A stretch of DNA of 64,000 nt, from positions 166,757 to 230,756 of the forward strand of contig NIVC01001758.1 in assembly GCA_002269645.1 (NCBI GenBank), read 5' to 3'. Every line of letters begins with the position of its first letter. Position 1 is the first letter of the stretch. The notes beneath the pieces are model-generated. The model had not been told where the DNA came from, did not search any database, and saw only the letters and a list, made by a program, of their open reading frames with translations. The translations under genes were made by a program, and so were the position numbers. Below are positions 1 through 32,519 of the stretch, in pieces. The DNA comes from Macrostomum lignano. Lineage: Eukaryota.

Positions 1-3000
1 GGCAGCATAGCGAAACGGAGCACGGCCAAGGTTTGAGTCGAGCCATTGGCAACGGACACGGAAGAATCGTGCGACACCCAGGCCATCAAGCTGCCGTCCC
101 CATTGAAAGCAACGTCACGGATCCAACCGCCTTGAGTGGGCGGAAAACGGTTTTTTCTATTAAGGAAATCTGTCTAGAAAACTTAACAAAATAGCAGGCA
201 ACACCGTCATAAATGTCTTTTTTAGTCTCCCAGGATTCGCTCAAATGGATTTCTAGTTTCCTGCGAAAATGATAGAGCTTCAAGAATTCAGCACAATGAA
301 AACAGAATACTTTAGTGTTACTCAGTGGCCATTCTAGCTGGTCTATCAATATCTATTCTATCTAGTCTATTCGTGTCTTTTCTATCTGTGCTATCAAAAT
401 CTTGATTCTATCTGGTCTATTCGTGTCTATTCTATCTGGTCTATCAATATCTATTCTATCTGGTCTATTCGTGTCTATTCTATCTGGTCTATCAATATCT
501 ATTCTATCTAGTCTATTCGTGTCTTTTCTATCTGTGCTATCAAAATCTTGATTCTATCTGGTCTATTAGTGTCTATCCTGGCTGGTCTATCAATATCTAT
601 CCTGCCTGGTCTATCAGTATCTATCCTGTCTGGTCTATCAGTATTTTTCTATTATTTAGTATTTTTCTTTGCCTGGGCTAAACCCTCCAGTCCTTCAGTG
701 CAAGGAACAACACACTAATTAGAAGACAGGTATAAAAACAGCAGTTTCATAATTTCATATAGGGGTGGCAATACGTCAACTGTATGAACAACACATCAGT
801 CGCATGCAGAGGTGATTGTCGATTTTCAAAAATCTAAAAATCTAAGTACTAGAAAAGGCTGGTAAGGAACAGGTTAAAATAGACCGATGCTACGGTAATG
901 CAAGAACCGAGCAAGCGGACACCGTTTAGATGCTTATAAAAAGACAACATTCACTAACCGTACACGGGCTCAATAGTCCAAGAGGGGATTCGCACAGCAA
1001 TAATAACTAATAATAATTTACACCTTTTTTAAAAACACAACACGTTTTAATAGGAAAGGAAATAAAAATTGTGTTATTTAACTTACCGCGATAAGTATCT
1101 GAGTCTAAACAGGTAAGGATGTCAACGTTTTATTAAAAAAAATTATTTAAGATTTCCCAAGTCATTTTGGCAAGTTTAGAAACGGCTTAAATTGTTGTCC
1201 TGAGTACGAGTTGGATACTTGCAATTAAAGCTGTCAAAAATGCAAAATAACTCTAATTTGATTGACACAAGTCAACCGCTCGTTCTGAGATTCGATACCT
1301 AATCTACCGGATAAATACCCGCCTTCATTCGGGTCAATACCCTCCTTCCCTCGGGTCAATACCCTTCCCTCAGGATCGATACCCTTCCCCTCAGGATCGA
1401 TAACCTTCCTCTCAGGATCGATACCCTTCCTCTCAGGATCGATAACCTTCCCCTCAGGATCGATACCCTTCCCCTCAGGATCGATACCCTTCCTCTCAGG
1501 ATCGATACCCTTCCTCTCAGGGTCGATACCCTTCCTCTTAGGGTCGATACCCCTCCCCTCAGGATCGATACCCCTCTCCTCAGGATCGATACCCCTCTCC
1601 TCAGGATCGATACCCCTCCCCTTAGGATTGATACTCTCTCCCCTCAGGATCCCTTAGGGAAAATACCCCTCGCCAGGAATAGTGGCGTTACCTCCAGTGT
1701 GATAATACCCCTTCAATGATCTATACAGATGTCGTAAGGTTACCCACTTAATTCAACTGCTTAAGATGACCATTGGCGCATTTAAAAAAACAATAGAAAA
1801 TAACCCTCAGCAACTCACTGCCTCCGTTGGTGTACTCGGCCATAACGTTGCTAAATTTCATGTTGCCGCCCCAGCAGGTGGCGGCCGGTTTCTCGTCGGC
1901 CTCTTTTAGATAGGCGCTAACAATTCTAGCTTTGAAATCGGTGGCCCCTACGGCCAATAGGCAATTGTTCGGGTGCCAGGCTAGGCAAGTCACAGTAGAC
2001 TTGAACGGCTTTTTGATCTGCTTGCACACCCACCAGTTGTGCTCCTGAAGGTCAGATGTTAAGTGCTAATTAGTAGATCAAATTAGTAGATCAGGTAAGT
2101 AGTATAAAGCATCACTATTCTGCTATTCAACTGTTGGATTGTAAAAAACTTAAACAGACACAGGGATGAAAGGGAATCCAACGTAGATACAAAGGAGGAT
2201 CCTAATAAAAGAGGATTCCTGGAATGCTACAGAGAAAAGGCGATTCCTGGAATCCTACACAGATAAAAGGGGATTCCTGGAATTCTATATAAAGATAAAA
2301 AGGCATTCCTGGAATCCTACAGAGATAAAAGGGGATTCCTGGAATCCTACAGAGATAAAAGGGGATTCCTGGAATCCCAAAGAGATATAACCTTTGGGGA
2401 TTCCTGGAATCCTATATAAAGATAAAAAAGGTATTCCTGGAATCCTACAGAGATAAAATGGGATTTCTAGAATGCTACAGAGATAAAAGGGGATTCCTGG
2501 AATCCTACAGAGATAAAAGGGGATTCCTGGAATCCTACAGAGATAAAGGGGATTCCTGGAATCCCAAAGAGATATAACCTTTGGGGATTCCTGGAATCCT
2601 ATATAAAGATAAAAAAGGTATTCCTGGAATCCCACAGAGATAAAAGGGGATTCCTGGAATCCTTTATAGAGATAAAAGGGAATTCCTAGAATGCTACAGA
2701 GATAAAAGGAGATTCCTGGAAGCCTTCAGAGATAAAAGGGGATTCCTGGAATACTACAGAGATAAAAGGGGATTCCTGGAATCCTACAGAGATAAAAGGG
2801 AATTCCTGGAATCCTACAGAGATAAAAGGGAATTCTTGGAATCCTACAGAGATAAAAGGGGATTCCTGCAATCCTAAAATGAAATCAGTAATAAAGAGCT
2901 ACTCACAGGTTCAAAGTGGCACACGGACACCAGTTTAGCGCCGCTGCCAACAGCAAATTTATTCTCCAATGGCGACCATTTAACCACTGTAGCGGCCCGA

Positions 3001-3293
3001 TCAATTCGTAGCAGCACCAGGGTTGGCCGAAATTGGCCAGTGGAATCGCGAGTCCAGACGTGGGCATTCCTATCGGCACTGGCCGTGACAATGCGGTCAG
3101 TATTGGCGGCCCAGTCGATGCTGGTGACCCGTTCGCTGTGCTCCTCCAGTGACTGGAGCTTCTCCCATTTTTGGCCAGATTTTTTATAAATGTCCACAGT
3201 GTTGGAATTGAGCGACAGGGCCAATTGGCTGCAGTCTTTATTAAAGCTGTGACAAGTGATTGGAACTGGGCCAAATGAGAGCTCTTCAATCAT
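1..3293 (-). CDS. ARPC1: Actin-related protein 2/3 complex subunit 1 (p41-ARC, WD40), 3' part outside window; coding exons 3293-2907, 2044-1819, 130-<1
   Basis: Spliced translation [20 protein letters not shown]...VSVCHFEP|[48 protein letters not shown]...YTNGGS|[24 protein letters not shown] matches ARPC1 motifs (WWVxKxIKKPxxSTV, WHPNN, WVSHDS). GTGAGT donors at 2906 and 1818, AG acceptors at 2045 and 131; phases 0 and 1 are consistent. Confidence 0.95.
345..650. repeat. Degenerate TCTATC/TCTATT-based tandem array in ARPC1 intron
   Basis: Recurring TCTATTCGTGTCTATTCTATCTGG and TCTATCAATATCTATTCTATC subunits. Confidence 0.8.
1320..1655. repeat. 21-bp minisatellite (CCCCTCAGGATCGATACCCTT), ~14 copies, ARPC1 intron
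   Basis: Period 21 read directly, e.g. TCAGGATCG at 1391 and 1412. Confidence 0.95.
2205..2875. repeat. 30-bp minisatellite (GATTCCTGGAATCCTACAGAGATAAAAGGG), ~22 copies, ARPC1 intron
   Basis: Period 30 visible in 2761-2870; accounts for ORFs 2285-2635 and 2686-2871. Confidence 0.95.
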
Positions 3294-4289
3294 TGTTTGG
3301 CTTCTTTTTAAAAAAATTAGAGTCTCTGCAGAGTCAAAGTATGATGTTAAATAAAAAAATTAGTATAAAATTATAATCCCCTGTATATAAACTTTAATTT
3401 CTATCACCCTGACAACAGAGACATCAAAAACTTTATTCTACTTACTATTTGCTAGTGTCTAAACTGAGGAAAAAATCCTTGTCTATAGTACTTTTGTATG
3501 CCTCTGTCTCCAGAGTATAATGCTTATAACAAAATATAATATATTATGCCAATGACAAATAAAAGGCTCCAATCATTATTGTCATAGCTAATACTGAATA
3601 TCAAGGCACTGAAAGAGAACATTTTACCATGGCAATAATGGTCTATTACTAAATAGAAATGTTCTCTTTTGGCAGGACATTGCTCTTGCACACAACTCAA
3701 AAGACTATCTAGTCCTTCTAAGATACTAGAATTCCTTTTTTGGCTAAAGGAGATATGGCTACCTAATAGCCTAAATGCAAACCTACTCAATTATAGCATT
3801 TAGACATTTAAAATCCCATGCAAACACTATTACCTAATAGAGTTTAAGCACACTGAAAGCTATTATTGAGATAAAATAGGCAAAAACATCTAAATACTAT
3901 CTAAAAAGTTTGCTAAGCTTTTTGATAGTTGCAAGAAAAAGCAATAGCAACCCATACTCCTGAAAATGCTGTTTTGTGGGGAAAATTCTCGCATGCAACA
4001 AGGTACCAGGCAGCCATGCGCTATGTGAACAGTGTGCAGCCAAGAGGTTGAAACTTTTTTGGCACATGCCACGTGCAACAGTTTTGGCATAAATGACAAT
4101 ATTTTTTTTATTTTAAACTGAATGTCTCACAATAATAGTATAATGTACATAGTCATCTTTTTGTACATCTGCAATAAGGAAAACAATTTTTTGCCTGATG
4201 CAGTACAATTTTAAGGCATTTATAAGGCATTATATAATAAATACAAACAATAGTATTTTGTTAAAGTAAATTTCTTTTTTGTTTCATTT

Positions 4290-4590
4290 TGTTAAATTGG
4301 GGGAAGAAAGAAAGGAGAGGAGGAGAAAAGGAAAAGAAAGGAAAGAGAAGAGAGAGAGGGGAAAGGGAGAGAAAGAGAAAGAGAAAAAAAGAGAAAAAGG
4401 CAAGAAAAGTAATATACAAAGTGAAAATTAAGCTACAATTGGGGGAACTAATCCACAATTAAGAGGAACTAAGTTGCAATTGGGGGAACTAAGTTGCAAT
4501 TGGGAGGAACTAAGTTGCAATTGGGATGTCGATAAACTAAGTTGCACTGGACAAGTGAAATTTTGAGGTTGGGCATATATGTACCATGTT
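4290..4590. repeat. Dispersed repeat copy 1 (purine tract + AACTAAGTTGCAATTGGG subrepeats); copy 2 at ~6650-6900
   Basis: Both copies share ATATACAAAGTGAAAATTAAG..ACAATTGGGGGAACTAA and GTGAAATTTTGAG.TTGGGCAT.TATG. Confidence 0.8.
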
Positions 4591-4928
4591 ATCCAAATGG
4601 TAAGAAGACAAGACACAAATGTCTAAAGTTTGAATAGCTACTTGGATTGCATATAAGATAATTAATTAGATTAATTGAAAAAATATTAAGTATATCAAAT
4701 TATATAATATTATGTAATATAGGTTTAAATATGTAAATGTAACATTGATTGATATTAATGATATACATATACTATTTGTTGTTATATATGTATATTTATT
4801 TATATTCATTGAATTTGATTTTACATTCAATCAGATTCATATTACTGAGTATACAAGTTCCTTATTTTTTTTCAATTTCAATTTATCCCTTAATTTCAAC
4901 TATTCACTTCATAGCATTATCTGTCCTA

Positions 4929-7580
4929 ATGGCTAAGGCCAGTCTGAGTCAGCCTATGCAGGCCAGCCAAGGTTGGACTTGGATCTAGAAAGGAATGGGC
5001 CAATGCCAAGATGGCCAATCTACCACTGTTAGGAACCCACCACCAGCAGATCCTCACTATTGCCTTAACTGCCTAGGTGGGCAGCCTAAGCGCAACTGCC
5101 ATATGATTTGTGGTAACCAATCATCACTCAAGGGTCATTGCAACACCTGGCATGAAGGCCAAGGAGCAAGGCCTCCCAAGTTTGCATAAGAAGATCACCC
5201 TTACCTCCAGGGCTTCTGCAGGTGTGAAAGCTTTGATTTTATGCAAGGAACTTACCATTTTGGACAATCAGTTGAGACCATTGGCCAGTCAACCAAGGCA
5301 GCTCCTAGCCAGTCAGCCAAGGCAGCTCCTAGCCAATCAGCCAAGGCAGCTCCTAGCCAGTCAGCCAAGACAGCTCCTAGCCAGTCAGCCAAGGCAGCTC
5401 CTAGCCAATCAGCCAAGGCAGCTCCTAGCCAGTCAGCCAAGGCAGCTCCTAGACAGTCAGCCAAGGCAGCTCCTAGCCAGTCAGCCAAGGCAGCTCCTAG
5501 CCAGTCAGCCAAGGCAGCTCCTAGCCAGTCAGCCAAGGCAGCTCCTAGCCAGCCAACCGATGCAGCCTGGCCCTGACCCAGCCCAGGCCTCTAGCCTGTC
5601 AACAAGTGCAGCGGAGGTTGTGGGGCAACTAGTTCCTAGCCTTGGCTTTAGTCAAGCTCACATCTTGCAGCTCTAGTGGCATTAGCAAGGCTGCATCCTT
5701 GACTCTCATCACGCTAGCCATGATGGACCTCAAGCAACAAACTGATGTATCCAATGAACCTCCAGCCTTAGCACTGAATGAAGGCTTTGTGAAGGACAAA
5801 CTATGAGCCATCAATCAGCAGTTAGCCAATCTAATAGAAATAGTCTGGACGTTAGCCAACCAGTCTGCACTGCTGCTAGTTGATTGCAGTCATAAGACAG
5901 TGTTGAGAGCAAGAAATATGGCCAAGTTACTGGAGCATAAGCACCTAGCTATGGTACCTTGTGGAGCAGATTACCTCATTTACTGCATGAATATGCTTTT
6001 TGCTTGCTCAACAGGCCTGGCCATTGAAGGGAAAGTGATTCATTGCAGACATCCACTGTGTATTGTGAGTTTATCATTTCATATTCTAACATGTATAGAG
6101 AGATATTTTTATTTGCTTGTTCAAAGATTCTAACCAAAAGTTTAATTTTCACTCACTATTTCACAAAGGCACTTGCAATTCTTCACCTATTCATAGCAAT
6201 CCAAGAGGCAAGGGCACCCTGGCCACCAGGTGGCTCTTGATGGCTAAGAAACTGCAGAACTTGTCCAATGATCAGAACAAGTTTAGCAAGTTCCACAACA
6301 AGATTGCAGGACACCTCTTGGGCATGACAAGAAGGGTGCATGTGGCTGCAGCTTGCAAGTACTTGGGTCACTAGAAAAAAATGTGAGTACTCATCTTGTA
6401 AAATTTTTAAATTCTAATGCAATTTTTTAAACCCATTTGCAGCAGGTACTTGGAGAAGTATGTGTGTGCCATTCATGAGGTCATGCAATCCAGGATTGGC
6501 AGGATGACTGGCTGTCACCACCAGTGAATGGTGCCATCATTGCAATGACAGTTGTTGAAAGACCTAGGTTGAGCTCATACATGCCCAATACTTATCCAAC
6601 CTGTCCAAACCAGGCAGGTGAAATGGCTGCCAGTCAAGGTAAGTTGCAAAATCAAAAATGAAAAAATGAAAATTTGGGAGAAGAAAGGAGAAGAAGAGAA
6701 ATGGAAAAGAAAAGAGGGAGAAGAAAAAGAGGGAAAAGAGAAGAGAGAAAGAGAAAGAGAAGAAAAGAGAAAAGGTCATATACAAAGTGAAAATTAAGTC
6801 ACAATTGGGGGAACTAAGTTGCAATTGAGAGGAACTAAGTTGCAAATCTAGACAAAACTAGGTTGCACCGGATGGTGAAATTTTGAGATTGGGCATGTAT
6901 GGTTGAGCTGCAACCTTGGTCTATACCTTGAGGTAAAGACGCAGTCTGGCAGCCAGGTAGTGACAAAGCTCAATGAGGCTGCTGTGTATGCCTCAGCATA
7001 TAGCGACCTGCACTTTTACAGCGGCATCGGCTGAAATGGATGTTGGCTCCTCAACTTCTTGCTCCATTGGGATAGCAGCAGTAGGTCAAATAACTTGAAA
7101 AAATGTCAATGTTTCTACTTCAAATGCTCCCAAAGCTACATGGTAGACTTACATACCAAATAGGTTTTTGGTTTGGCACTATGCCCTATATACATTTTCC
7201 TCCTAATTGCCTCCCACATCATTTTATAGAGGTTGTGGTAGAGTCCTTCTATTCCACGATGTGCTCTTAGCAGAAACATAGTGGCCAGACAAATGCCACA
7301 CTCCAAGGGTGGACAAAACTGTGGTAGGTGCTGCCACTGGTTGGCAGTGGACTACAAATGCCTGCTGAAGAAGGTTGCCCAGGTGTACTTTGAAGGAGAC
7401 TTAGCACGTAGCGTTGATCCCCATTGCAGCCCTTTCTTCAAAGACATCTAGGCTACCACCTACAACGTCAGCTAGGTGGTAGACAAGCAGTCTTTTCTGC
7501 ACTCTTGCTGCCCATTTCTGGGGCACTCAGAGGAGGCGGAGGTCAACTAAGAGAACAAGGACATGCCTGACTGCCCCCTA
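4929..7580 (+). pseudogene. Decayed multi-exon gene, possibly transposase-like, with an N-terminal Cys/His (zinc-finger-like) segment and an 8-aa coding repeat
   Basis: One frame runs from ATG 4929 to 5576 interrupted only by TAG 4986 and TAA 5187 (...HYCLNC...CHMICGNQSSLKGHCNTWH...(AAPSQSAK)n). Further protein-like blocks are separated by GTGAGT/GTAAGT donors at 6065, 6383 and 6639. Family not securely identified. Confidence 0.5.
5283..5553. repeat. 24-bp tandem repeat (GGCAGCTCCTAGCCAGTCAGCCAA), ~11 copies
   Basis: Read directly; in frame with the pseudogene. Confidence 0.95.
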
Positions 7581-8452
7581 AGCACTGAGCTCATAAGTTT
7601 TAGCATAGTCACGCAGCTAGCAGCGGACTAATAGATGCTTTGCTGAACTTTGTTTTAACTATTGCAAATTCTGCTCCTTTTCCTAATAGTCCAAACTGGC
7701 TTAACTTGTTTATGGAATTATGGTATTTTTATAGACTTTCCTACTTTTATCTATCAGATGCTAGGAACTCCCCTCCCTATCCCCCCAGTCATTCAGCTTG
7801 GTGTGCATGGGGTGGATTGTGGATATGTGATTTTACCTCCCATGTATAGCGTGCAAAGGCAAAAATTATTCTCATGTACATAGAGCATACTTGAGACTAT
7901 GGATAGCAACCAATGATAACTATATAAAATAAAATATTAGACCTAGGCTATCTTAATATAGGCCCTATTAATAAAATATATAGCAAGTTTTACTAATATT
8001 GATTATATCATTTTTTGAGTATTCACTTTTTTGTAACACTATTTTTCTATTTAACTCTAATATATCTAGTACTAAGCTTTTGGCTTTATTTTATAATAAT
8101 AAAATATAAGACAAATTAATTTTTTTAAGTTTTTATAAGTTTATTAAATATAAATAGTGTTTTATTTGGGGTTGATGCAAAAGTTCTTTTATAAAATACT
8201 AGCTAAATATTTGACTTTGAATTTAACTTTTCAATGCTAAATTATTACTGATATCTAGAGAAATTCATTTTTATACTTCTTAAGAATAGTGCAGGATATA
8301 TATAGAAGATATAAAAATAATATATAATCCTAATTTTCAAAACAAAAAACTTTATCAAAATCAATATAGCTTAAAAAGACAAGATATCAAAGTATGGAAA
8401 TTTGGTTTTTTAGAGTATTTATTCAAAATTCAATATCAATGTTTTGGTTCTT

Positions 8453-9692
8453 GGCAATTTTCCTCTTTCATTTGTTAAATTAATTTTTTGTTTGAACACA
8501 AACAGTACTAACTTTAAATGACAAAAAACGATAACAATATGTCGTGGAAACCTTTGTAGCATTTAGAAAAGCATGAAATTGAAATCGCGCCAAGGTGTGT
8601 AAGAAAGTGAAGCAACAACTGTCTTTTAGCAATTGTCTATGGTTAAAACTGCAGGGATATCATTAGAAAACTAGAAGGGGGTATGAAGAAAATAATTTAC
8701 AAGTCCTTTTAAGTTTTTAGTCAGCTACAGCTCAAAAACATACAATTATATTCAACAACATGACATGACTGGTCACCTTGCAGCACCTATATTTATAGTA
8801 CCCCCTGGGCAAGTACATCTTACACTAGAGCTATGCAAGATTAATTTCACAATGTAGGAGCTTGCCACTATCATAAAAACACCTTGAGACATTATCAACT
8901 GGATGGCAATATACCATATTATTGTAAACCAAGGAATGGTCTTGCTTGACCTGCCCTGGAGGTGGCGCCGGCAATATAATGGCACCACAAATGCGATTGC
9001 AATGGCATATGGGTGACCAATTCTTGGATGGACTGGCATGGGCATGCACCAGCTGTCATGCCAAGTGTCAATTCAGAAAGGCTCATTTTTTGAAGCTAGT
9101 CATCTTACACTGCAGCAGCTGCTAGATCTCATTTGTGGTAGGCTATAGAAGCAAATCAGGGTGTCAATGAAAATGCAACATTGGTTATAATGTTATTATT
9201 GACTGGCAAAACTTCATCAGGGACATCTGTTCTCAGTACCTGATTGACCATCCAGTAGAACTAGGTAGTCCTGGTAGAGATGTAAAGATAGACAAATCCT
9301 ATTTCTTTCACTGAAAGTACCACCAAGGTGCCCACTGGCCAGGACAGTGGGTACTAGGCCAAGTTGAACATGGTACCAAGAAGTATGTGATGATTGCTAT
9401 TCTTAACCGTACTGCTACAATGCTGCTACCTTTGATTCGATGACACGTTCTCCCTAGTACACATGTGATTACTGATGGATGGAAAGTATATGCTTCATTT
9501 GCTTCACTTTCAAGCGTTGGATGGCAAGTGTTGCTTCATTTTTTATACGCCTTGGTGCAATTTCAATTTCAAGCTTTTCTAAATGCTACGAAGGTTTCCA
9601 CAATATACTATTATCGTTTTTTGTCATTTAAAGTTGGTACTATTTGTGTTCAAACAAAAAATTAATTTAACAAATGAAAGAGGAAAATTGTT
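8453..9692 (+). mobile_element. Merlin (IS1595/ISXO2-like) DNA transposon, degenerate and internally deleted
   Basis: ~165-bp TIRs (8453-8617 / 9529-9692); 8-bp TSD TGGTTCTT (8445-8452) / AGGTTCTT (9693-9700). Transposase remnant DGLAWACTSC...SIQKGSFFEASHLTLQQLLDLI...DWQNFIRDICSQYLIDHPVELGSPGRDVKIDKSYFFH*KYHQG...QWVLG...HVLPSTHVITDGWKVY resembles the ISXO2 motifs VEIDES, WVxG and TDGW. Confidence 0.9.
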
Positions 9693-10679
9693 AGGTTCTT
9701 CTTTATTTAAATAGAATGAAATATATATACAGGCCCTATATTAAATGAAATATAGATATACAGTGCAATGTTTGTTGATTTTTTGTTTATTATTATGACT
9801 AATATATTTTATATTTTAAAAAAATAGGTTAAATCTATATGACTAGAATTGACTATGTCTGTCTGTTTGTTTGTTTGTTTGTGAAGTTCACATTTTAGAA
9901 TGAACCACAAGACCAATTTTCACAGGACTTACACTGTTAGCTTGCAAATTTTCCGGCGGTGATGTGGCAGATTTTGCTAAAATTTCTGATAATGCAAAGG
10001 ATGTTTAATTAGCAAAAAACTACTTTTTGCCATGGAATTTCCATGGTCAATTGAAGAAAAGGCTTCTTGACTGTCAATTTGGCTGACTTGATTGAGGTTG
10101 CATCAGCAATCTGTCCTATCTCTCTAGTATATTTCATTTAGCTAGGCTGATTTGTGTGCAGAAAGGAATGGGGGTTTGTTGGCTCACTTGGCAATGTGCA
10201 AAGGCGTGTATACCCCTGGCTGCAGGGCGGCGTCAAAATTTAGCTTTGGCAATAGTTGGGGAAAGAAATTCAATGACTTATTTTGCAGGCCTTCAAGTGT
10301 AGCTATGATTTTCATTCATTGATTGTGCTTCGAGTTTTTTAGATTGGAGTGAGATAATTATATTGCCTGAAAGAGCTTGAAATGCTGAACATGGGGATAT
10401 AATTTTATTGCTTCAAATCTGAAAATCAGAAGCATAGCACTAAAAAGAAGAGTGGCTTGAACAATGTACATAGGGACCAATTGAAAATGGACAGCTGTGT
10501 ACATTGCTGGGGCAGGGAAGGAGAGTTGAGCTCAAATGCAATTATCAATTGCGAGGCCTCTGGGTTGGGGGTTCAAATTTGTACACGCAAAATATTTTGT
10601 ATATTTCTCTGACTGAGATTTTGGATTTTGGTTTTTGACTATTTGAAAATGGTTTTGACTATTTGAAGCATTTGAAGTC

Positions 10680-10885
10680 TTGACTTACTTGACTTAGCTG
10701 CAGGGTGGTCCGTAGACACAGCAGGGAGGCAAGGGTTGCCTATTCCGCTAGCCCCTGAAGGCCCGCAGACAGGCAGAGGCCTGGGGCCGGTCAGGGTGGT
10801 CTGCCGGTCTGTCCTGCAGCGTGATCTTCTGTTGGGAAGAAACTGGCTCGTCTAGTCACCCGAAGGAACTAGATGAGCCGTGAGG
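10680..10885 (-). mobile_element. Short GC-rich insert, probably the 3' end of a non-LTR retroelement or SINE (RTE-like tail)
   Basis: Flanked by the 13-bp direct repeat AGCATTTGAAGTC (10667-10679 / 10886-10898). The minus strand ends in TAAGTCAAGTAAGTCAA; CpGs are retained unlike in the flanks. Confidence 0.5.
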
Positions 10886-11069
10886 AGCATTTGAAGTCAG
10901 TTTTGACTATTCAAAGTCAGTTTTAACTATTCTAAGTTTGTTTTGGCCATTCAAAGTTTGCTTTGACTGTTCTAAGTTGGTCTTCACTATTTGAAGTTGG
11001 CTTTGACTATCCTATTTGTGTGTGCTGTATGTGAAGTGTGCTGCTTATTGGTGTCATTATATTGCTTTT

Positions 11070-11315
11070 CACTGCTTGATCTGTCTGTCTTCCAGCAGGT
11101 TGTCTCTGCTTGATCTGTCTGCTTTATTGTGGGCTTTCTCTGCTTGATCTGACTTTTAGCGGGCTGTTATTGCTTGATCTATCTGTCTTTTAGCGGGCTG
11201 TCTTTGCTTGATCAGTCTGTCTTCTAGCGGGCTGTCCCTGCTTGATCTGTCTGTCTTCTAGTGGGCAGTCTCTGCTTGATCTGTCTGTCTTCTAGTGGGC
11301 AGTCTCTGCTTGATT
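11070..11315. repeat. 34-bp minisatellite (TGCTTGATCTGTCTGTCTTCTAGCGGGCTGTCCC), ~7 copies
   Basis: Read directly. Confidence 0.9.
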
Positions 11316-11911
11316 GATGATTAATACTGCAAGGTGTCTATGGGTGATGTTGCCAGGTTTGGTACAATTTGAAAACTGTCTATATCCTGCGAAGTGGGTC
11401 TTTTTGCTAGTAGGCTACTATTAATAAACAATCAACAAATATAAAAAGAAACATAACCATGGTATAATTAGATAAAATATGCAAGTAAACTTTATAGGAG
11501 TCATGTATGCATGCCAACTATGTATGCTTAACTTTAGGCATGCAAAGCCAATGTATACCCAAATTTTTGGGTATATACTCTATAATCCAGTGTGTATAGG
11601 GTTTTTCTATTGTTTCAGCCAATTTAGGTGTTTTCCAAATCTTAGCTTTTTGTTTTTTTAGGTTTTTTTTAGGTTTTCCTGATTTCAAACATTCTGCCTT
11701 TCATCAAAAGCAGTAGGCCTAACAATTTTCATGCTAAAAAATAAAATTATTATATACATATTTAAAAAATTGAAAAATATGAAAATAATTTTTTTTTCAA
11801 TGAAATTTGCTTCTTAAACTTTTCCAAGAATTATAGTTTCTTGTCTATCTAGGCCCTACTTGGTCTAGATAGTAGGGCCTAATCTGATACTGATAGGCCC
11901 TACCCAAAAGG

Positions 11912-13535
11912 GGCAGCCGATCAAAAGGGCGACAGATGAAAAGGGCGACAGTTAAAAGGGCGACAGTCAAAAGGGCGACAGTCAAAAGGGCGACAGGGTA
12001 TTAGACCAAGAACTACTTAAGTGGAAGGACGGGAAACCTCGTTTCTTAGAAAATCTTAGAATCTTAGCAATAACAATTTTCGTGCTGACAATTACCAGCA
12101 AGTACTTGAGCTAGGTAAGAAAATTACATGTATACATGTACATGTAGAATGAAAAGAATGAGAAGTAAAAGCTAACCATTGTCATAATTCCTTCCTACAT
12201 GTATACATGCAAGGCACTTAAGGCCATCGTCCCGCACGCGAAACCAGAAGGCTTTGTCGTTGACTTTGAGGCTGCAGTTTGGAGAGCCATCTGAACTGTC
12301 TTCCCACAAGCATCTATTCGCGGATGTGTCTTCCACTACACGCAGGCTGTTTGGCGTCACATTCAGCAGCTAGGCTTGCAGCCAGCATACTGTGACGATG
12401 ATGGAACTCAGCGATTCTGCCGAAAGCTGATGGCGCTCCCCTTCCTGCCACCTCAGCATATTGCGATGACATTTTACTGTCTCCGCGTTGAGACTACTCT
12501 AACACCTCTCCTGTCTGCCCTGTGCGACTATGTCCAAGTGACGTGGATCACCAGCTCCATCTGGAACATCCATGACATCTCCGTATACAGACAGGTGAAG
12601 TTATGAAAAAAATCTGTTATATACCCAGAAAAATATCATTGCAATCTTGGAGAGAACTTGGAAAAGACAGTACAATGCATGTAAAAAGTACATGTACAAG
12701 TAAAGTGCACATGTAGGAGTAAAAGTGCACATGTAAAAGTGCACTTACATGTACATGTAGGAGTAAAAGTGTACTTAGGCACTGTTGCGGATCCAGAAAT
12801 TTTTTAACGGGGCCGGGGGACACAGAGTACTAATTAAGGTGCATGTTTATGCATATCATGGTGTACATGTATATGTACCTGAAAATGTGTACTTTCCATA
12901 GAAAAAAAGAAAAAATCAAACTCGACAGGGTGCGCGCGCCCTATGCACCCCCTTTAAATCCGCTACTGCTAGGCAGCCAGAAAAAATATATTTTTCTTTA
13001 CTTCAATAGGCGGTTAGGACCAACAACAACTTAGAGAGCTAGCATCGCGCTTTAAACTACAGAGCCCAGCGAGGAAACATCCAATTCTACCTGCTCATCA
13101 AGCTCCTATTCAATGAAGCGCGAATGATCCCCGTAGAGGTGCAGCTCCTCTCCCAAGGAGTAATGCGCCGCGTACAGCGCAACAGATACCAAAGTATGTA
13201 GGCCCAGTACTTCAAATACTGGAGAGAATTCAGGCGTAGCAACCACTCAGCGGATGATCTACTGAAGGCAGTTAGTGAAATAAATGGACCTCACTGAACC
13301 ACATTTTAACATTTAATAGTGTGTCCAATATGTGTCCAGCTTTTATACAACCCCATTTTAACTGCTCGTACAATTTTAACAATGCATTTTAACAAATACA
13401 AGTATGATACATGTTTACTGCTTTTAACAAATACTTTTAATGTACGTGGAACTCGTATTTTTGATATAAATACACTGTAACTGTCGCCCTTTTGACTGTC
13501 GCCCTTTTGATCTGTCGCCCTTTTGACCTGTAGCC
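11912..13535 (+). mobile_element. Mutator-like (MULE) transposon, non-autonomous, with intron-containing transposase pseudogene
   Basis: Perfect 9-bp TSD CCCAAAAGG (11903-11911 / 13536-13544); TIRs built of AAAAGGGCGACAG repeats. Remnant ORF ...FVVDFEAAVWRAI*TVFPQASIRGCVFHYTQAVWR...RKLMALPFLP...DYVQVTWI | RTNNNLES*HRALN...FYLLIKLLFNEA carries the MULE DFE, CxFH and RTNNxxExWH motifs; stops at 12292, 13040, 13199. Confidence 0.92.
12782..12968. mobile_element. Small MITE nested in the MULE intron
   Basis: Termini CTGTTGCGGAT / ATCCGCTACTG (9 of 11 inverted match); TAGGCA on both flanks (12776-12781, 12970-12975). Confidence 0.45.
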
Positions 13536-14712
13536 CCCAAAAGGTATTGCTAGGCCTAGGCCTAATAGTGATAAAATTGAACATCAAAGTATTGAAATTG
13601 TGCCCAACATGACACTGATCTAACCCAAGGCCTCTATTATATTTTATAACATTTTCACTTGGCCACTAACAATCACTAAGCTTAAGGCTAGGCCTAACTT
13701 GGCTAAGCTATATCATTATATTTATATCACAACTCAGTAGTAGTGCTATTGTATTGCTCACTCAGTATTGATTGTAGGCCCTATCACTTAATTATTATTA
13801 GCATACTTATCAATATCAGTTATTATTATTAATAGATAGACAATATCATTATCACTATACTATAGTATCAGTGACAGTGAGTGACAATAACATGGCATTG
13901 CCATTGGCATTAGGCCTACCAGATTGATCAGAAAAAATTGAGAAATAATAAAGAAGTGATATACTTATAACACGATACTATTGCTTACTCTATAGGCTCA
14001 TAGAGTAAGCAATAGTTACTTAGAAGAGATAGGGAATAGGAATGGCGGATAGTGTTATAATCTCCTCCAAGACAAACCAACGTAAAAAAATTACACTAGT
14101 TTGTCTCATTTGAATACGCACGCAATTTAACGTCTAACGTTCACAGTCGAACTTCACTCAACTCTAGCGTGCCCAATCAGTCAATGTGCATGGTGACAAT
14201 TCTCACTATTATCACTATAGAAAAACACATCATTGCTAATTTTCTACCACTTTGTTTTTTTTCATTATTGTCTCTTGTGACTACGAGTTAAAAAAAACTG
14301 CGCTGCCTCTGTTTATTGAATCTGAATCTCGTGCAACAGCTTGTTGCATTATTAATTAATACACATGTAACATTGCATTACGTACTTAGTTGTGCTGCAC
14401 TCGAGCGTACGTATTACCCCCCGGACACAACTTGGCTCCCCCAATCTTTGTTACATTGGTGGGAAGTGCGCTTTATAGTGCTTCGTAAAATTTCAGAAAT
14501 TACATCGAAATGATTGAATACAATCTTACATGAAATATTTATAATGAATAGAGAGCTATAGATTCGCTCAGGAAAGTTATCCCGGCTAAAAGATGCGATT
14601 TCTCTAGAGTATGTGTATACATATATGATGCCCAGCCAAAGGCGGATTTTGAAATATGATAAAAAGATACGCGGAAACCCGGCCGGTCGATCGCACTCAG
14701 CTTTCTATAGAT

Positions 14713-15085
14713 AAGGGGGCCGGATTTTAACCATCAGAGTGGGAGCGCCATATTATACAGTAGAGAGGCGCCATAAATACACTAGAGGGGCGCCATTATT
14801 ATGCACACAAGAGGGGCGCAAAATACACTTGAGGGCCCGGGCGTCATGCATATATTAATACACTATATAGAGGGGCGCCAAACTATACACTATATAGAGG
14901 GCGCCATACACTGACGGGCGCCATAAGTTATACACAAGAGGGGCGCCATGGCCATACACTGAGGGGACGCCATGCATAATACACTATGGGGCGCCATACT
15001 GAGCAAAATTAACTGAGGGCGGTAAGTTATTAGGACTTTTTTTGGATTCAATCGGGGCGCCATCATCGCCCACGCCCCCCATAAA
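14713..15085. repeat. Cluster of GGGGCGCCA motifs, MITE-like
   Basis: About a dozen irregularly spaced (G)GGGCGCCA motifs; begins GGGGCCGGATTT and ends CCCCCATAAATC (partial inverted ends only). Confidence 0.45.
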
Positions 15086-15455
15086 TCATGGCCGGAGGCC
15101 AGGGCCCAGCCCAGCCCATCCAGCCACTGCACCGCCGTGCAAGTGGCAGCTTACTCTTATCTCACATTGACATCCACAATGGATTTTGGTCATGATGACT
15201 CACACGCAGCCGTTCCTAAAATCCCTTAAATTATTGAATCTCATCCTCTCATGCATGCAACTTTCGATCGTTTCACGTGTCACCCCTGACCCCTTAGCGG
15301 AATGGGCGACTCTCGCCTCCCCGCTGCGTCTTCGGACTGCCCCCCCCCCTGACCCCCCAGTCTAGAGATGATGTTTGACCGCTTAGGAAAAATTCCAGGC
15401 AAACCAAGGTACAAAGGTATCCTTTAAATATTTATCGATTTAGACGCCAGCTTCA

Positions 15456-15527
15456 AGCAGAGTGGCGCAGTGGAAGCGTGCTGGGCCCATAACCCAGAGG
15501 TCCGTGGATCGAAACCACGCTCTGCTA
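15456..15527 (+). tRNA. tRNA-iMet: Initiator tRNA-Met (CAT)
   Basis: 72 nt AGCAGAGTGGCGCAGTGGAAGCGTGCTGGGCCCATAACCCAGAGGTCCGTGGATCGAAACCACGCTCTGCTA: A1:U72 pair, G:C-rich anticodon stem, CAT anticodon, initiator-type T loop GATCGAAA. Confidence 0.98.
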
Positions 15528-15530
15528 ACA

Positions 15531-15536
15531 TTTTTT
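15531..15536 (+). terminator. Pol III terminator (T6)
   Basis: TTTTTT 3 nt after the tRNA end. Confidence 0.85.
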
Positions 15537-17328
15537 AAAAACAATTTTCAGTTTCAGATAAATCGTGCTAATAAAGTCAAAACGTTTTAAAAGGAATATT
15601 TTTTTAGTATTGTCATCAAAACTAGTTTTTTTTATACTCTAGTCTAGAGTGGTAACGAACGTATCTACTGCATGGAATGTAACATTATGCAGCTTTTTTA
15701 AATGCTCAAAGCCATGCTTTCTATACATATCGGCAATATTGCGCGCTGGGCGCTGCGCTATGGGTCGAGTGGGAATAATGAATTGTTGGTAATGGAAAAT
15801 CAAAATCAGATTGTGAGTATTTTTGGATCTATTATCAAAAGGAGTATTAAACACTTAATATTTAGGAAATACATTAAAATAACAATTTTAGTTCCGTTCA
15901 GATAAGATAAAGAAAACGGTTTAGAATAAAAAAAATTTAAGGAAACTAGTAATTGAAGATTAATATTCTTTTGTTGCTACTTTTAGTACAGTGGATTAGC
16001 AATGTGGAGTTTGAGAAAAAATTACTTCGTTTCAACAAGGATTTTGGCAAAGAAACACTTTCGACAATACAATTAAACACGCGTTTTGGGCGTTTGTGTT
16101 TCAAAATGTGTGCTTTTGTTCAACAATGGTCCCCTTCTTAGGACGCAGATTGCAGCGATAGAGGCTACGGTAGTAGTCTTTAAACGAAAATACATTAAAC
16201 AAAAGCACACCTTCCTTTCATTCTTCAAATTAATTTGAGAAACTAGGGTACTCTGTGGCGTTTAAAAACAATACTTTAGACAAGCGACTTCAAATATTTC
16301 TACTAAATTTTGTTTTAACGAAACCATTTTTACATTAGAGAGGGAAAGGGACCGTGCAATTAAGGGTTTTTTGCCAATTCAAGATTGGCATAAAATATAG
16401 CATGCTCAACAATGAATACAGCCAACAATTTCATTAACATTTGATTCTCGCATTGAGAGTTGAGCTCGCAATATAAGCTATCTGAGACGACAAATGAGGC
16501 ATGCAATGTCTTGCTGTTGCTCTAAGCTACCTATTTACCTCTGTTTCTTGATTTAGGCTCAAGTTTTAGTGCAGAGAAACTAGCATTATCGCCCCGTTGT
16601 ATTATTTACACTGAAAAGCTCAGCTCAGGAGAGCAGATAGAGGTTAACGCGAACAGTTGAGTAATTGTCAATTGCTTCGTCGGTCGCAATCGAGCTTCTC
16701 AAGATGAGAGAGGTAATGAAGAGGTGATGAGGGGGCAGGCGGGGGCTGTCCAACCCTCTCTCCCTTACTCAGCAGTTTGTACATGGAATAATAGGCGGCG
16801 TGGAGCCAGCCATGCAGCCTCGAGGGCATGGGGGTTTGTTTTATGCTTGCTGCTCGAAAACTCGAAAACAGAGAGAGGAGGGGGTTCGGGTTACGAAATA
16901 GAAAAAACGAGCGAGAGATGGTTGAGACCAACGGAGACGAAGTTATAAAGATCGAGAGCGCGAGAGAGAGAATCAAGAAAATAGCAGCCCCAGTTCTCTG
17001 CGTCATTTCTTTCTCTCATTTTCAGTTTACGTCAGCCTCGTCTTCACAAAAAAGCACGCTTCTCTTCATCTTGGTCAGTTCTCATTCGCTAGCAGCATTG
17101 GACACAACCTCACGGCCCTGCTCTACTCGGGTTCTCGACAAACGAGAGGAGAGCGCGGGCAGAGAGTCGGGCTTACTCCATTGTCAAATACTCAGCAGCA
17201 GTTGCAGACTCTCCGTTCGGGCCTGACTTCGGAACCGTTGTAAGCCGCTCTTGCTACCCTAGAAAAGTAAGAGACTTACTGCTAAGTTCAACCGATTGTC
17301 AGCTTTAAAAAACGTTGGCAGTCCCTGA

Positions 17329-20300: not shown

Positions 20301-21156
20301 AAAAACGATAGCAAACACAAGCACAAAGGCGCAACCCGGCCTCACACGCAAACCTCACAAAACTAAAGCTGGGAATTAGACTGAGTCGGCAGAATATCAA
20401 AGTTTTGCTATAGCAAGGGGTCGGCAAACATTTGGACCGCGAAGCCTCTCTATCCGGTCCTCGGGTCCGTTTAAACTTCACAATAGCAAACCGGCCAGCA
20501 TATGGTTTACACTCAGCAACATTTAAAGTTTCCACCTTAAAACCAGCTGGGGTCAACCAGTGGCTGCTTTAATCCAATTCTAGCCATAACCCTCCACTCT
20601 CTCCTCACCAGCCTATGCTGGGCATTGTGACGCAAATTGCATCACCCACAATTGAGACGAGTAAATCACGTCGCTTGGGGTTGAGATCTGAGACAAGTTG
20701 ACCACTGGTTTCTTTAGCATGTTGCTGAGTGTACATGTACGAGCGTATGTCTCTTCTTGGCTCTCTCTTCAATTCTTCCCCTCTACTCTTCTCTCTCTCC
20801 TCTTTCCCCGCTTCTCTCCTCTCCCCTCTCATCTCTCTCCCTTTAAGCTGCCGGCGCTTCCACGATGGTGTCCCTTCCGATCTGGCTGCGCCCCTGACTT
20901 AAAATACTTCAGAGTAGCTACGATCAAGACGTAACTGTCAAGTTATCCCTCATATCGGTCTATCTGATTTGTACCGATCTGTGTCTGCATAACGCAAGAC
21001 AGCGACATTGCTAACCGCTCCAAGCTCTTTAAGCACTGTAATTTGCGAATTTCCCCAACAACAACTATTTCTGTGGCTCTCTAAAAAGGGACGCTATAAA
21101 GAGGAAAAGGAGAAAGATGACGAGGGGGGAAGGTGGCATCAAGGCTACTGACTAAG

Positions 21157-21249
<93 letters not shown>

Positions 21250-27756: not shown

Positions 27757-28625
27757 TTCCTACCCACTCTGGAGGCGAAAAGCTACGATGGAATTTTCTC
27801 GCCGAAATCACGCGCCAGAACCATGGAAGCCCGGCTGCGGCCATGTGTTGACGGGTGCGCAATCTTCAGGAAAAGCAATGAGTGAGTCGCTTGGGAATGT
27901 GGTATCATTAGAGACATTGTTATTTCCAGCTTCTATGACCCTGAATAATCCAGCTTCTATCACATTTGGAGAATTGAGCGTCCATGACCAGGGGAATCTA
28001 TGCATTGTCTATGACCTTGGAGAATCCAGCGTCTGTGACCAGGGGAATCCATGCAGTGTCTATGACCTTGGAGAATCCAGCGTCTGTGACCAGGGGAATC
28101 CATGCAGTGTCTATGACCTTGGAGAATCCAGCGTCTGTGACCAGGGGAATCCATGCAGTGTCTATGACCTTGGAGAATTCATCGTCTGTGACCAGGGGAA
28201 TCCATGCAGTGTCTATGACCTTGGAGAATCCAGCGTCTGTGACCAGGGAATCTATGCAGTGTCTATGACCTTGGGGAATCCAGCGTCTGTGACCAGGGGA
28301 ATCCATGCAGTGTCTATGACCTTGGAAAATCCAGGGTCTGTGACCAGGGGAAACCATGCAGTTTCTATGACCTTGGAGAATCCAGCGTCTGTGACCAGGG
28401 GAATCCATGCAGTGTTTATGACCTTGGAGAATCCAGCGTCTGTGACCAGGGGAATCTATGCAGTGTCTATGACCTTGGAGAATCCAGGGTCTGTGACCAG
28501 GGGAATCCATGCAGTGTCTTTGACCTTGGAGAATCCAGCGTCTGTGACCAAGGGAATCCATGCAGTGTCTATGACCTTGGAGAATCCAGCGTCTGTGACC
28601 AGGGGAATCCATCCAGGGGAATCCA
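27757..28625 (+). pseudogene. Partial duplication of CNOT6 exon 3 plus downstream intron, with an expanded 51-bp array (~13 copies, 27980-28625)
   Basis: 27757-27881 closely copies 24279-24403 (FLPTLEAKSYDGIFSPKSRARTMEARLRPCVDGCAIFRKSNE) including the GTGAGT donor and intron sequence. Confidence 0.92.
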
Positions 28626-32138: not shown

Positions 32139-32519
32139 GGGTCTCCCTAAAACACGCCCCGCACCGCCCTGCAGCGCTACACATTAAAACAAATTGGACT
32201 ATAACTGAAGACACTAAAAAATGCGTTTTCTGTTAAGCTTCAAAGCTTTTATTAAATTTAGTTTTTTTTTATTTGAAATATAAAATTCAGTGAATAATAA
32301 GTGATATTAATAATAATATTAATAAAGTAATAATAATATAACTTAATAATCAAAACGAGAATATAAAAAATAATAACAATATTTATATTAATAATTAAAG
32401 ATATTTATTCCATTACTCTTACAACAAATAGTTTTCCTTGCAATCAAATACTGCATTGACAAAAAATGTTATAATGTGTAGCGGTTCGGGGCGGTGCGGT
32501 GCGTATTTTAGGGAGACCC
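32139..32519. mobile_element. 381-bp MITE with ~47-bp TIRs and perfect 8-bp TSD
   Basis: TIR GGGTCTCCCTAAAA(C/T)ACGC...CGCTACACATT at both ends; TSD AACTCTTT at 32131-32138 and 32520-32527. GG termini with an 8-bp TSD fit Merlin better than hAT or P (inference). Confidence 0.92.

What the first reader, a model, noticed from the sequence alone, without database searches (positions are those of the whole stretch)
3300..13950. Hypermutated domain with both CG and CAG/CTG (CWG) C>T decay: a RIP-like or non-CG methylation scar in an animal
Seen: this ~10-kb block is nearly CpG-free and rich in TAG/CTA, while DNA right of ~14 kb is CpG-rich. Manual alignment of the two Merlin TIR arms gives about 14 transitions, 1 transversion and 1 indel, many at CG (TCGCG vs TTGCA) or CAG (ACAGT vs ATAGT; CAA vs TAG from an ancestral CAG). 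Two MULE nonsense codons arise at CWG (CTGG>CTAG at 13040, CAG>TAG at 13199) and one at CG (CGA>TGA at 12292). The 34-bp array alternates CCAG/CTAG and CGG/CAG/TGG. Established: 5mC deamination gives C>T; CHG methylation is a plant hallmark; mammalian DNMT3B makes non-CG mCAG; fungal RIP mutates repeats. Inference: heritable germline CG plus CWG methylation, or a directed C>T process, acts on this domain. That would be unusual for an invertebrate.
Basis: partly seen in the sequence, partly recalled or inferred. Interest (0 to 1): 0.8.

Follow-up and report, generated by a model that had tools for sequence, protein, structure and literature searches.

The report
CpG-depleted (once-methylated) domain beside ARPC1
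A 12-kb stretch upstream of an animal's ARPC1 gene has lost about four fifths of its CpG sites to TpG/CpA, the ordinary scar of germline CpG methylation in a patchily methylated invertebrate genome. The proposed extra decay at CAG/CTG sites does not hold up statistically.

Summary
Window 3294-11900 has 57 CpG against 311 expected (o/e 0.18). The 254 missing CpGs are matched by an excess of 258 TpG+CpA. The CpG-poor block actually runs about 2030-13970, with sharp edges (o/e 0.97 to the left, 0.93 to the right). Inside it, a MULE remnant (11912-13535, perfect 9-bp target-site duplication) is only mildly depleted (o/e 0.72) and looks like a later insertion.

In repeats that diverged in place, only CpG is specially mutable inside the block: C>T per array cell is 0.286 inside against 0.029 outside. 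CWG sites behave like other non-CG sites:
- In repeat pairs, CWG changed at 2/12 sites and CHH at 18/94.
- In array columns, CWG changed at 9/18 and CHH at 15/39 (p=0.56).
- The CWG/CHH ratio is about the same inside (1.7) and outside (1.9) the block.

A modest compositional shift (CAG/CTG lower, TAG/CTA and CAA/TTG higher) goes in the predicted direction. It lies within tile-to-tile heterogeneity and is absent from the window's second CpG-poor block. RIP is excluded. Stop codons made by transitions are biased toward CAG/TGG by construction.

Verdict: an ordinary footprint of mosaic CpG methylation. Interest is low.

The parts
2030..13970 (.).
   Evidence: CpG observed/expected: 2/31 (2030-2873), 57/311 (3294-11900), 0/11 (13541-13970). 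Flanks: 653-1298 o/e 0.97 and 13971-23000 o/e 0.93. CpG positions are listed.
2874..3293 (-). First coding exon of an ARPC1 (Arp2/3 p41) gene. ATG at 3293-3291. It lies inside the CpG-poor domain but keeps 19 CpGs.
   Evidence: ORF; 57-63% identity to animal ARPC1A; WD40 hits; CpG positions.
3325..3360 (-). Polypyrimidine tract plus CAG, a likely 3' splice acceptor 34 nt upstream of the ATG. It suggests the domain is a long 5'-UTR intron of ARPC1 (inference).
   Evidence: Sequence ...tttttttatttaacatcatactttgactctgcag|agactc...ATG read.
2205..2876 (.). 30-bp tandem array in ARPC1 intron 1, CpG-free
4294..4585 (+). Left copy of a ~290-bp direct repeat (purine-rich tract plus 21-bp units). Its partner is at 6670-6905, about 80% identical.
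5236..5614 (.). 24-bp tandem array, CpG-free, lying between the two direct-repeat copies
6670..6905 (+). Right copy of the direct repeat
8455..9690 (+). Merlin/IS1595-like non-autonomous DNA transposon remnant with 163-bp TIRs (91%). The internal DDE remnant carries stop codons.
   Evidence: The Pfam DDE_Tnp_IS1595 hit is E=1.2e-4, below the curated cut-off. A possible 7-bp GGTTCTT target duplication is offset by 2-3 nt.
10882..11016 (.). 20-bp tandem array
11039..11320 (.). 34-bp tandem array with CGG/CAG/TGG (CpG decay) and CCAG/CTAG/TTAG variants
11912..13535 (+). MULE transposon remnant. Its TIRs are built of 15-bp GGGCGACAG-type sub-repeats. It has three stop codons (12292, 13040, 13199) and a ~410-bp non-coding interruption. 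It is flanked by a perfect 9-bp target-site duplication, CCCAAAAGG (11903-11911 and 13536-13544). CpG o/e is 0.72.
   Evidence: (best hit E=6.5e-65 to a PF10551 protein, 49% identity).

Best explanation
The block at about 2030-13970 is a domain that was CpG-methylated in the germline for a long time, in a genome that is otherwise largely unmethylated (mosaic methylation).

Spontaneous deamination of 5-methylcytosine turned about 80% of its CpGs into TpG or CpA. The dead transposons and tandem arrays inside it otherwise decayed by ordinary, transition-biased neutral mutation.

The domain covers the 5' end of the housekeeping gene ARPC1: intron 1, the first coding exon, and probably a long 5'-UTR intron carrying the Merlin and MULE insertions. 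The most likely targeting is therefore gene-body or intronic-TE methylation.

The MULE inserted into the already CpG-poor DNA later and has only begun to decay.

Shown: the CpG loss with a reciprocal TpG/CpA gain, in-place CpG-specific change, sharp boundaries, and no CWG excess specific to the domain.

Inferred: that methylation was the cause, that it acted in the germline, and that the domain belongs to the ARPC1 transcription unit.
For: - 57 CpG observed against 311 expected, and TpG+CpA 258 above expectation against 254 CpG missing.
- Edges are sharp: o/e 0.97 at 653-1298 and 0.93 at 13971-23000.
- In-place decay. In the Merlin arms, 5 of 12 CpG positions differ against 6 of 38 CHH positions, each as CG versus TG/CA. 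In the 34-bp array, CpG C>T is 4/14 cells, against 12/412 in arrays outside the domain.
- Non-CG contexts are uniform inside (CA 0.070, CT 0.059, CC 0.042). They are raised over outside only about as much as A/T-site transitions are.
- A second block of the same kind lies at 33000-36200: 12 CpG against 63 expected, with TG+CA excess 58.
- An acceptor-like site lies just upstream of the ARPC1 ATG.
- The MULE has a perfect 9-bp target-site duplication and CpG o/e 0.72.
- Literature. Invertebrate 5mC is 97-99.9% in CG context (table in PMC4378273). It is mosaic, concentrated on gene bodies and on TEs within them (PMC11292947, PMC8857923).
Against: - ARPC1 intron 2 (130-1747) is not CpG-depleted: o/e 0.75 overall and 0.97 outside its arrays. 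The domain is therefore not simply 'the ARPC1 gene body'.
- No 5'-UTR exon or transcript evidence is available.
- The organism has no close relative in the databases: the best ARPC1 hit is 63% identical and the best MULE hit 49%. Its methylation machinery and methylome are unknown.
- A residual compositional shift is not produced by simulated pure CpG decay. Observed ratios are CAG/CTG 1.00 against 1.25, TAG/CTA 1.17 against 0.96, and CAA/TTG 1.08 against 0.93. The simulation gives CAG 1.18 and leaves TAG and CAA unchanged.
Confidence: 0.8

Rival explanations
1. As well as CpG, cytosines in CAG/CTG (CWG) are methylated, or otherwise targeted for C>T, within this domain. It would lower CAG/CTG and raise TAG/CTA and CAA/TTG.
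For: - With arrays and ORFs masked, the Markov-corrected ratios shift in exactly the predicted directions. CAG/CTG is 1.00 [0.88-1.14] against 1.25 [1.18-1.32]. TAG/CTA is 1.17 against 0.96. CAA/TTG is 1.08 against 0.93.
- Among the 11 non-CG contexts, the pattern 'Cxy down, Txy up' is strongest at CAG and CTG.
- A simulation needs an extra 0.1-0.2 conversions per CWG cytosine to reproduce the shift. Pure CpG decay does not reproduce it.
- In arrays inside the domain, C>T per cell is 0.079 at CWG against 0.045 at CHH (p=0.08).
Against: - The CWG/CHH ratio is about the same outside the domain: 1.9 without the 45-bp satellite and 0.7 with it. Only CpG is domain-specific.
- Column-level tests are not significant: 9/18 against 15/39, p=0.56. 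Repeat pairs give 2/12 against 18/94. Combined, 11/30 against 33/133, p=0.25.
- Eight of 32 trinucleotides differ between domain and outside at |z| of 2.9 or more. These include TAA/TTA (-5.3), ACA/TGT (-3.6) and AGG/CCT (+3.2), which CWG decay does not explain. Regional heterogeneity of this size is therefore generic, and the three 'predicted' ratios are arithmetically coupled.
- The other strongly CpG-poor tile, 34001-36000, has CAG 1.25.
- The TAG ratio follows absence of ORFs.
- Nonsense codons are biased toward CAG/TGG by the genetic code.
- CHG methylation is 0.01-0.14% of mC in the surveyed invertebrates (PMC4378273).
Confidence: 0.07
2. The block is CpG-poor because its component sequences arrived already CpG-poor, or because of a methylation-independent composition effect in AT-rich non-coding DNA. 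On this view no methylation of this locus ever took place.
For: - The block is a patchwork of TE remnants and arrays with GC 0.32-0.46.
- No methylation data or DNMT genes are available.
- The MULE carries its own, different CpG level.
Against: - CpG-specific changes occurred after insertion or amplification: between the two arms of one Merlin copy, and between copies of the 34-bp array.
- The depletion covers unrelated sequences, including a genic intron, and stops sharply at 2030 and 13970. Those edges are not TE boundaries.
- The missing CpGs are matched one for one by TpG/CpA. GpC is not depleted (o/e 1.47).
- The AT-rich neighbour at 31000-33000 has CpG o/e 0.90.
Confidence: 0.1
3. A RIP-like, repeat-directed C>T mutagenesis, or cytidine-deaminase editing of transposons, hit the repeats in this block.
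For: - TpA/ApT is 0.90, marginally at the RIP threshold.
- Transitions dominate in the Merlin arms, 12-13 to 1.
Against: - (CpA+TpG)/(ApC+GpT) is 1.59. CpA/TpG are enriched, the opposite of Neurospora-type RIP.
- Sequences in the block have no other copy in the 64-kb window.
- The depletion covers unique intronic and intergenic DNA as well as the repeats.
- The MULE, which is a repeat, is the least affected part.
- Overall transitions to transversions in repeat pairs is 26:12.
Confidence: 0.01

Closest known systems
Mosaic (fractional) CpG methylation of invertebrate genomes and its evolutionary footprint of low CpG o/e. Examples: Ciona, oyster, cnidarians, annelids (PMC4378273, PMC3827831, PMC8857923, PMC11292947).
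   Same: - Kilobase-scale CpG-depleted domains with sharp edges next to DNA at CpG o/e about 1.
- Reciprocal TpG/CpA excess.
- The domain overlaps the 5' part of a housekeeping gene and contains intronic-type TE remnants.
- Decay is confined to the CG context.
   Different: - Methylation itself was not measured.
- The domain does not cover the downstream ARPC1 intron.
- The species is unknown and has no close relative in the databases.
Plant CHG (CMT3) methylation, and mammalian DNMT3B-type mCAG
   Same: Only a weak compositional tendency (CAG/CTG lower, TAG/CTA and CAA/TTG higher) in the direction such methylation would produce.
   Different: - There is no significant and no domain-specific excess of C>T at CWG in repeats.
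- CAG/CTG is not depleted in absolute terms (Markov ratio 1.00).
- CCG cannot be assessed.
Fungal repeat-induced point mutation (RIP)
   Same: C>T/G>A transitions in repeated DNA, leading to nonsense codons.
   Different: - CpA/TpG are enriched rather than depleted.
- Unique DNA is affected equally.
- There are no duplicated partners in the window.
- The context is CpG.
Merlin (IS1016/IS1595-like) and MULE DNA transposons of marine invertebrates
   Same: - Long TIRs.
- A degenerate DDE (IS1595-like) remnant and a MULE transposase remnant.
- A perfect 9-bp target-site duplication for the MULE.
- The nearest MULE proteins come from molluscs, cnidarians and echinoderms.
   Different: - Both copies are dead (stop codons, internal loss).
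- The Pfam scores are below the curated cut-offs.
- No close family members were found (49% identity or less).

Membership tests
Footprint of a germline CpG-methylated domain (mosaic invertebrate methylation) | CpG o/e far below 1 while adjacent DNA is near 1 | tested here: met
   o/e 0.18 at 3294-11900, against 0.93 at 13971-23000 and 0.97 at 653-1298.
Footprint of a germline CpG-methylated domain (mosaic invertebrate methylation) | Reciprocal excess of the deamination products TpG/CpA; GpC not depleted | tested here: met
   TG+CA is 258 above expectation against 254 CpG missing. GpC o/e is 1.47.
Footprint of a germline CpG-methylated domain (mosaic invertebrate methylation) | CpG-specific transitions arising in place, inside the domain only | tested here: met
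   Array CpG C>T is 0.286 per cell inside against 0.029 outside. Merlin arms differ at 5/12 CpG positions against 6/38 CHH positions. Numbers are small.
Footprint of a germline CpG-methylated domain (mosaic invertebrate methylation) | 5mC present on the domain in germ cells; DNMT1/DNMT3 present in the genome | not testable with these tools
   No methylome and no genome beyond 64 kb. No close relatives in the databases.
Footprint of a germline CpG-methylated domain (mosaic invertebrate methylation) | Coincidence with a transcription unit (gene-body methylation) | tested here: inconclusive
   The domain covers ARPC1 intron 1, coding exon 1 and a probable 5'-UTR intron (acceptor-like site). ARPC1 intron 2 is not depleted.
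Non-CG (CHG/CWG) methylation footprint | C>T rate at CWG higher than at CHH, specifically in the domain | tested here: not met
   Columns 9/18 against 15/39 (p=0.56). Pairs 2/12 against 18/94. Combined p=0.25. The cell ratio is 1.74 inside against 1.91 outside.
Non-CG (CHG/CWG) methylation footprint | Depletion of CAG/CTG with gain of TAG/CTA and CAA/TTG beyond composition | tested here: inconclusive
   The shift goes in the predicted direction (1.00 against 1.25; 1.17 against 0.96; 1.08 against 0.93). It is within generic regional heterogeneity, is absent from the second CpG-poor tile, and is confounded by ORF content.
Non-CG (CHG/CWG) methylation footprint | mCHG detectable by bisulfite, EM-seq or nanopore | not testable with these tools
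   No methylation data.
RIP (repeat-induced point mutation) | (CpA+TpG)/(ApC+GpT) of 1.03 or less, and TpA/ApT of 0.89 or more | tested here: not met
   1.59 and 0.90.
RIP (repeat-induced point mutation) | Targets are duplicated sequences | tested here: not met
   blastn of the domain against the window finds only the internal TIR and direct-repeat pairs. Unique DNA is equally CpG-poor.
MULE DNA transposon | MULE transposase domain | tested here: met
   Pfam PF10551 scores E=2.8e-5, below the cut-off. phmmer gives E=6.5e-65 to PF10551-bearing proteins, and conserved motifs align.
MULE DNA transposon | TIRs flanked by an 8-11-bp target-site duplication | tested here: met
   TIRs of about 58 nt, about 90% identical. 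Perfect 9-bp CCCAAAAGG at 11903 and 13536.
Merlin / IS1595-like DNA transposon | IS1595/IS1016-type DDE transposase | tested here: inconclusive
   DDE_Tnp_IS1595 scores E=1.2e-4 (22.6 bits against a cut-off of 27) on a frame carrying stop codons. It is not recovered when whole frames are scanned.
Merlin / IS1595-like DNA transposon | TIRs with an 8-9-bp target-site duplication | tested here: inconclusive
   163-bp TIRs, 91% identical. GGTTCTT occurs on both sides but is offset by 2-3 nt from the TIR ends.

The most novel reading that the evidence does not exclude
In this unsampled animal lineage, germline-methylated domains carry appreciable methylation (or another C>T-promoting process) at CAG/CTG in addition to CpG. 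The extra process would convert roughly 10-20% of CWG cytosines over the time in which about 80% of CpGs were lost. It would leave the observed shift of CAG/CTG toward TAG/CTA and CAA/TTG.
Probability: 0.06. Interest if true: 0.7.

Novelty: already known. Interest (0 to 1): 0.15.

Why it matters
If the CWG reading were true, it would be the first heritable non-CG methylation footprint in an invertebrate germline. It would bear on when DNMT3-type non-CG activity arose.

As it stands, the block is a clean textbook example of a CpG-decay domain with sharp edges. It is useful only as indirect evidence that this unidentified animal has, or had, mosaic germline CpG methylation that includes the 5' region of ARPC1 and the TEs lodged there.

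Tried and rejected
- **Polarising mutations against a TE family consensus.** The best MULE relative is only 49% identical, and nothing from the same genome appears to be in the protein collection. An ARPC1 exon query found no hit above 63% and no self-hit.
- **Other copies of the domain's sequences within the window.** None were found beyond the internal pairs.
- **Pfam scan of whole + strand reading frames of 3300-11900.** No hits. Passing DNA references failed because of stop codons. The minus-strand frames were not scanned.
- **First array-slicing script.** It crashed, and the rerun lost many units to indels. I replaced it with wrap-around alignment.
- **Protein-level polarisation of the MULE.** Only three informative changes: D>N at a CpG, G>S at CHH, and W>stop at CAG. 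This is too few to use.
- **RIP.** Rejected on the dinucleotide indices.
- **A 5' neighbour (APOBEC-like) context.** Six of seven non-CpG changes in the Merlin arms are at AC (read). The array data show no CA/CT/CC specificity. The sample is too small to pursue.


Full report
**What the window is**

The 64-kb window is animal-type nuclear DNA, and it is rich in satellites.
- An ARPC1 (Arp2/3 p41) gene lies on the minus strand. Its first coding exon is 2874-3293, the next is 1748-2029, and a further exon sits at the left edge.
- A SIRT1-like ORF is at 36862-38859. Long dynein heavy-chain ORFs are at 50445-60659.
- The best database relatives of ARPC1 are only 57-63% identical. Those of the MULE are 49% or less. 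The species, or any close relative, is therefore not in the collections. No TE family consensus or orthologous locus could be used to polarise mutations.

**Check of the observation: CpG depletion**

CpG depletion is real and strong.
- Window 3294-11900 has 57 CpG against 311 expected (o/e 0.18).
- TpG+CpA is 1272 against 1014 expected. The excess of 258 equals the 254 missing CpGs. GpC is not depleted.
- Sliding windows show o/e 0.07-0.33 from about 2 to 12 kb, and about 0.9-1.3 from 14 to 20 kb.

- ARPC1 intron 1 (2030-2873) is also CpG-poor, at 2 against 31 expected.
- 13541-13970 has 0 CpG against 11 expected.
- The MULE remnant between them has o/e 0.72.
- The flanks are normal: 0.97 at 653-1298 and 0.93 at 13971-23000.

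The domain is therefore about 2030-13970, with sharp edges. The MULE (11912-13535) has a perfect 9-bp target-site duplication, CCCAAAAGG. It reads as a later insertion into DNA that was already CpG-poor.

A second block of the same kind lies at 33000-36200, with 12 CpG against 63 expected.

**Check of the observation: the repeat details**
- The Merlin-like arms (8455-8617 and 9529-9690, 91%) differ by 12-13 transitions, one transversion and one indel.
- The three stop codons are at 12292, 13040 and 13199. Homologues have R, W and Q at those columns.
- The 34-bp array has CGG/CAG/TGG and CCAG/CTAG/TTAG variants.
- Pfam support for 'Merlin' (IS1595 DDE, E=1.2e-4) and 'MULE' (E=2.8e-5) is below the curated cut-offs. 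The MULE is confirmed by phmmer hits at E=6.5e-65.

**Is there CWG-specific decay? Direct evidence**

I used sequences that diverged in place.

Tandem arrays were aligned to their own consensus by wrap-around alignment. C>T per cell:

| Context | Inside the domain | Outside the domain |
|---|---|---|
| CG | 0.286 | 0.029 |
| CWG | 0.079 (9/18 columns) | 0.029 |
| CHH | 0.045 (15/39 columns) | 0.041 |

- CpG hypermutability is about 6-fold over CHH inside and absent outside, so it is domain-specific.
- The CWG/CHH ratio is not domain-specific. It is 1.74 inside (p=0.08 on non-independent cells, p=0.56 on columns). Outside it is 1.91 when the large 45-bp satellite is left out, and 0.70 when it is included.
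- By dinucleotide, inside values are CA 0.070, CT 0.059, CC 0.042 and A/T transitions 0.032. Outside they are 0.034, 0.019, 0.030 and 0.024. This is a uniform rise consistent with older arrays.

Repeat pairs give CG 6/21, CWG 2/12 and CHH 18/94. The pairs were the Merlin arms, the 4294/6670 direct repeat and the MULE TIRs.

Combining columns and pairs gives CWG 11/30 against CHH 33/133, p=0.25.

In the Merlin arms, five differences are at CpG, each as CG versus TG/CA. One is at CAG and six are at other non-CG sites.

The stop-codon argument is circular. A single transition can create TAG only from CAG or from TGG, and the TGG route is a CAN site on the other strand.

**Is there CWG-specific decay? 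Composition**

With arrays and recognisable ORFs masked, first-order-Markov-corrected ratios are as follows:

| Trinucleotide | Domain | Rest of window |
|---|---|---|
| CAG/CTG | 1.00 [0.88-1.14] | 1.25 [1.18-1.32] |
| TAG/CTA | 1.17 | 0.96 |
| CAA/TTG | 1.08 | 0.93 |

This is the direction CWG decay predicts. A simulation shows that pure CpG decay lowers CAG only to 1.18. An extra 0.1-0.2 conversions per CWG cytosine would be needed to reach the observed value. I therefore cannot exclude a modest effect.

Four points weaken it.
- Eight of 32 trinucleotides differ at |z| of 2.9 or more. The strongest is TAA/TTA (z -5.3), followed by ACA/TGT and AGG/CCT. CWG decay does not explain these.
- The three 'predicted' ratios are arithmetically coupled.
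- Across 2-kb tiles, the TAG ratio tracks absence of ORFs (rho -0.56) and GC content more than CpG o/e (rho -0.40). CAG against CpG o/e gives rho 0.29, p=0.13.
- The other CpG-poor tile (34001-36000, CpG o/e 0.20) has CAG 1.25.

CAG/CTG is not depleted in absolute terms, in contrast to CpG at 0.18.

**RIP**

(CpA+TpG)/(ApC+GpT) is 1.59, where RIP predicts 1.03 or less. The domain's sequences have no other copies in the window. Unique DNA is as CpG-poor as the repeats. RIP-like mutagenesis is rejected.

**What it most likely is**

This is a domain that was CpG-methylated in the germline within a mosaically methylated genome.
- It covers the 5' end of ARPC1.
- A polypyrimidine tract plus CAG lies 34 nt upstream of the ATG. 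This suggests that the 10 kb upstream is a 5'-UTR intron, which would make the Merlin and MULE copies intronic TEs.
- This matches what is described for invertebrates. 5mC is 97-99.9% in CG context (table in PMC4378273). It is concentrated on gene bodies and on TEs within them, in a mosaic pattern (PMC11292947, PMC8857923, PMC3827831).
- The weak point is that ARPC1 intron 2 is not depleted. The targeting (5'-biased gene body, TE-centred, or other) remains inferred.

**Verdict**

The CWG/RIP half is not supported, although a small CWG effect cannot be excluded with 64 kb and no outgroup. The phenomenon is of an already known kind, and interest is low. The tests that would settle it are a genome-wide polarised spectrum and a germline methylome.

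Noticed in passing
window 33000-36200: A second sharply CpG-depleted, AT-rich block (12 CpG against 63 expected; TG+CA excess 58). It lies immediately upstream of the SIRT1-like ORF (36862-38859, +), while 31000-33000 next to it has o/e 0.90. As at ARPC1, the CpG-poor block lies 5' of a housekeeping gene's coding start.
   Followed up: partly
window 11903-11911 and 13536-13544: A perfect 9-bp target-site duplication, CCCAAAAGG, flanks the MULE remnant. Its TIRs are built of 15-bp GGGCGACAG-containing sub-repeats that all keep their CpG, unlike the neighbouring Merlin TIRs.
   Followed up: yes
window 4294-4585 and 6670-6905: Direct repeats about 290 bp long and about 80% identical (purine-rich tract plus 21-bp TAAGTTGCAATTGGG units) bracket 2.1 kb that contains a 24-bp array. 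This could be a terminal-direct-repeat element or a segmental duplication. It was not classified.
   Followed up: partly
window 50445-60659 (-): The dynein heavy chain is encoded in very long uninterrupted ORFs (2096 aa and 1062 aa), with a 277-aa ORF (56494-57327) overlapping the junction. This implies very few introns or a frameshift there. The SIRT1-like gene is also a single 665-aa ORF. The gene body has CpG o/e about 0.9-1.0.
   Followed up: no
window 29551-30789 and 27788-28630: The 42-bp and 51-bp tandem arrays are open in several reading frames. One is fused in frame to a DnaJ-like C-terminal segment (MSVAKNVLTDPQERKLYDQW...). It is unclear whether the repeats are coding.
   Followed up: no
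window 18243-19118: A 16-bp satellite (GATATGAAGTGTCGGA, about 55 copies) with local CpG o/e up to 2.5. Only 1 of 110 CpG cells shows C>T, consistent with unmethylated DNA right of the domain.
   Followed up: partly
window 40580-44904: A 4.3-kb satellite of 45-bp units with higher-order periods of 69, 114 and 159 bp. Many of its C>T variants at CHH sites (93/1483 cells in 6 columns) are shared across copies and dominate pooled array statistics.
   Followed up: partly
window 8455-9690: Six of the seven non-CpG transitions between the Merlin arms are at cytosines preceded by A (ACA x4, ACT x2). ACA/TGT is also relatively low and ATA/TAT high in the domain (z -3.6 and +2.9). The sample is too small to interpret.
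   Followed up: partly
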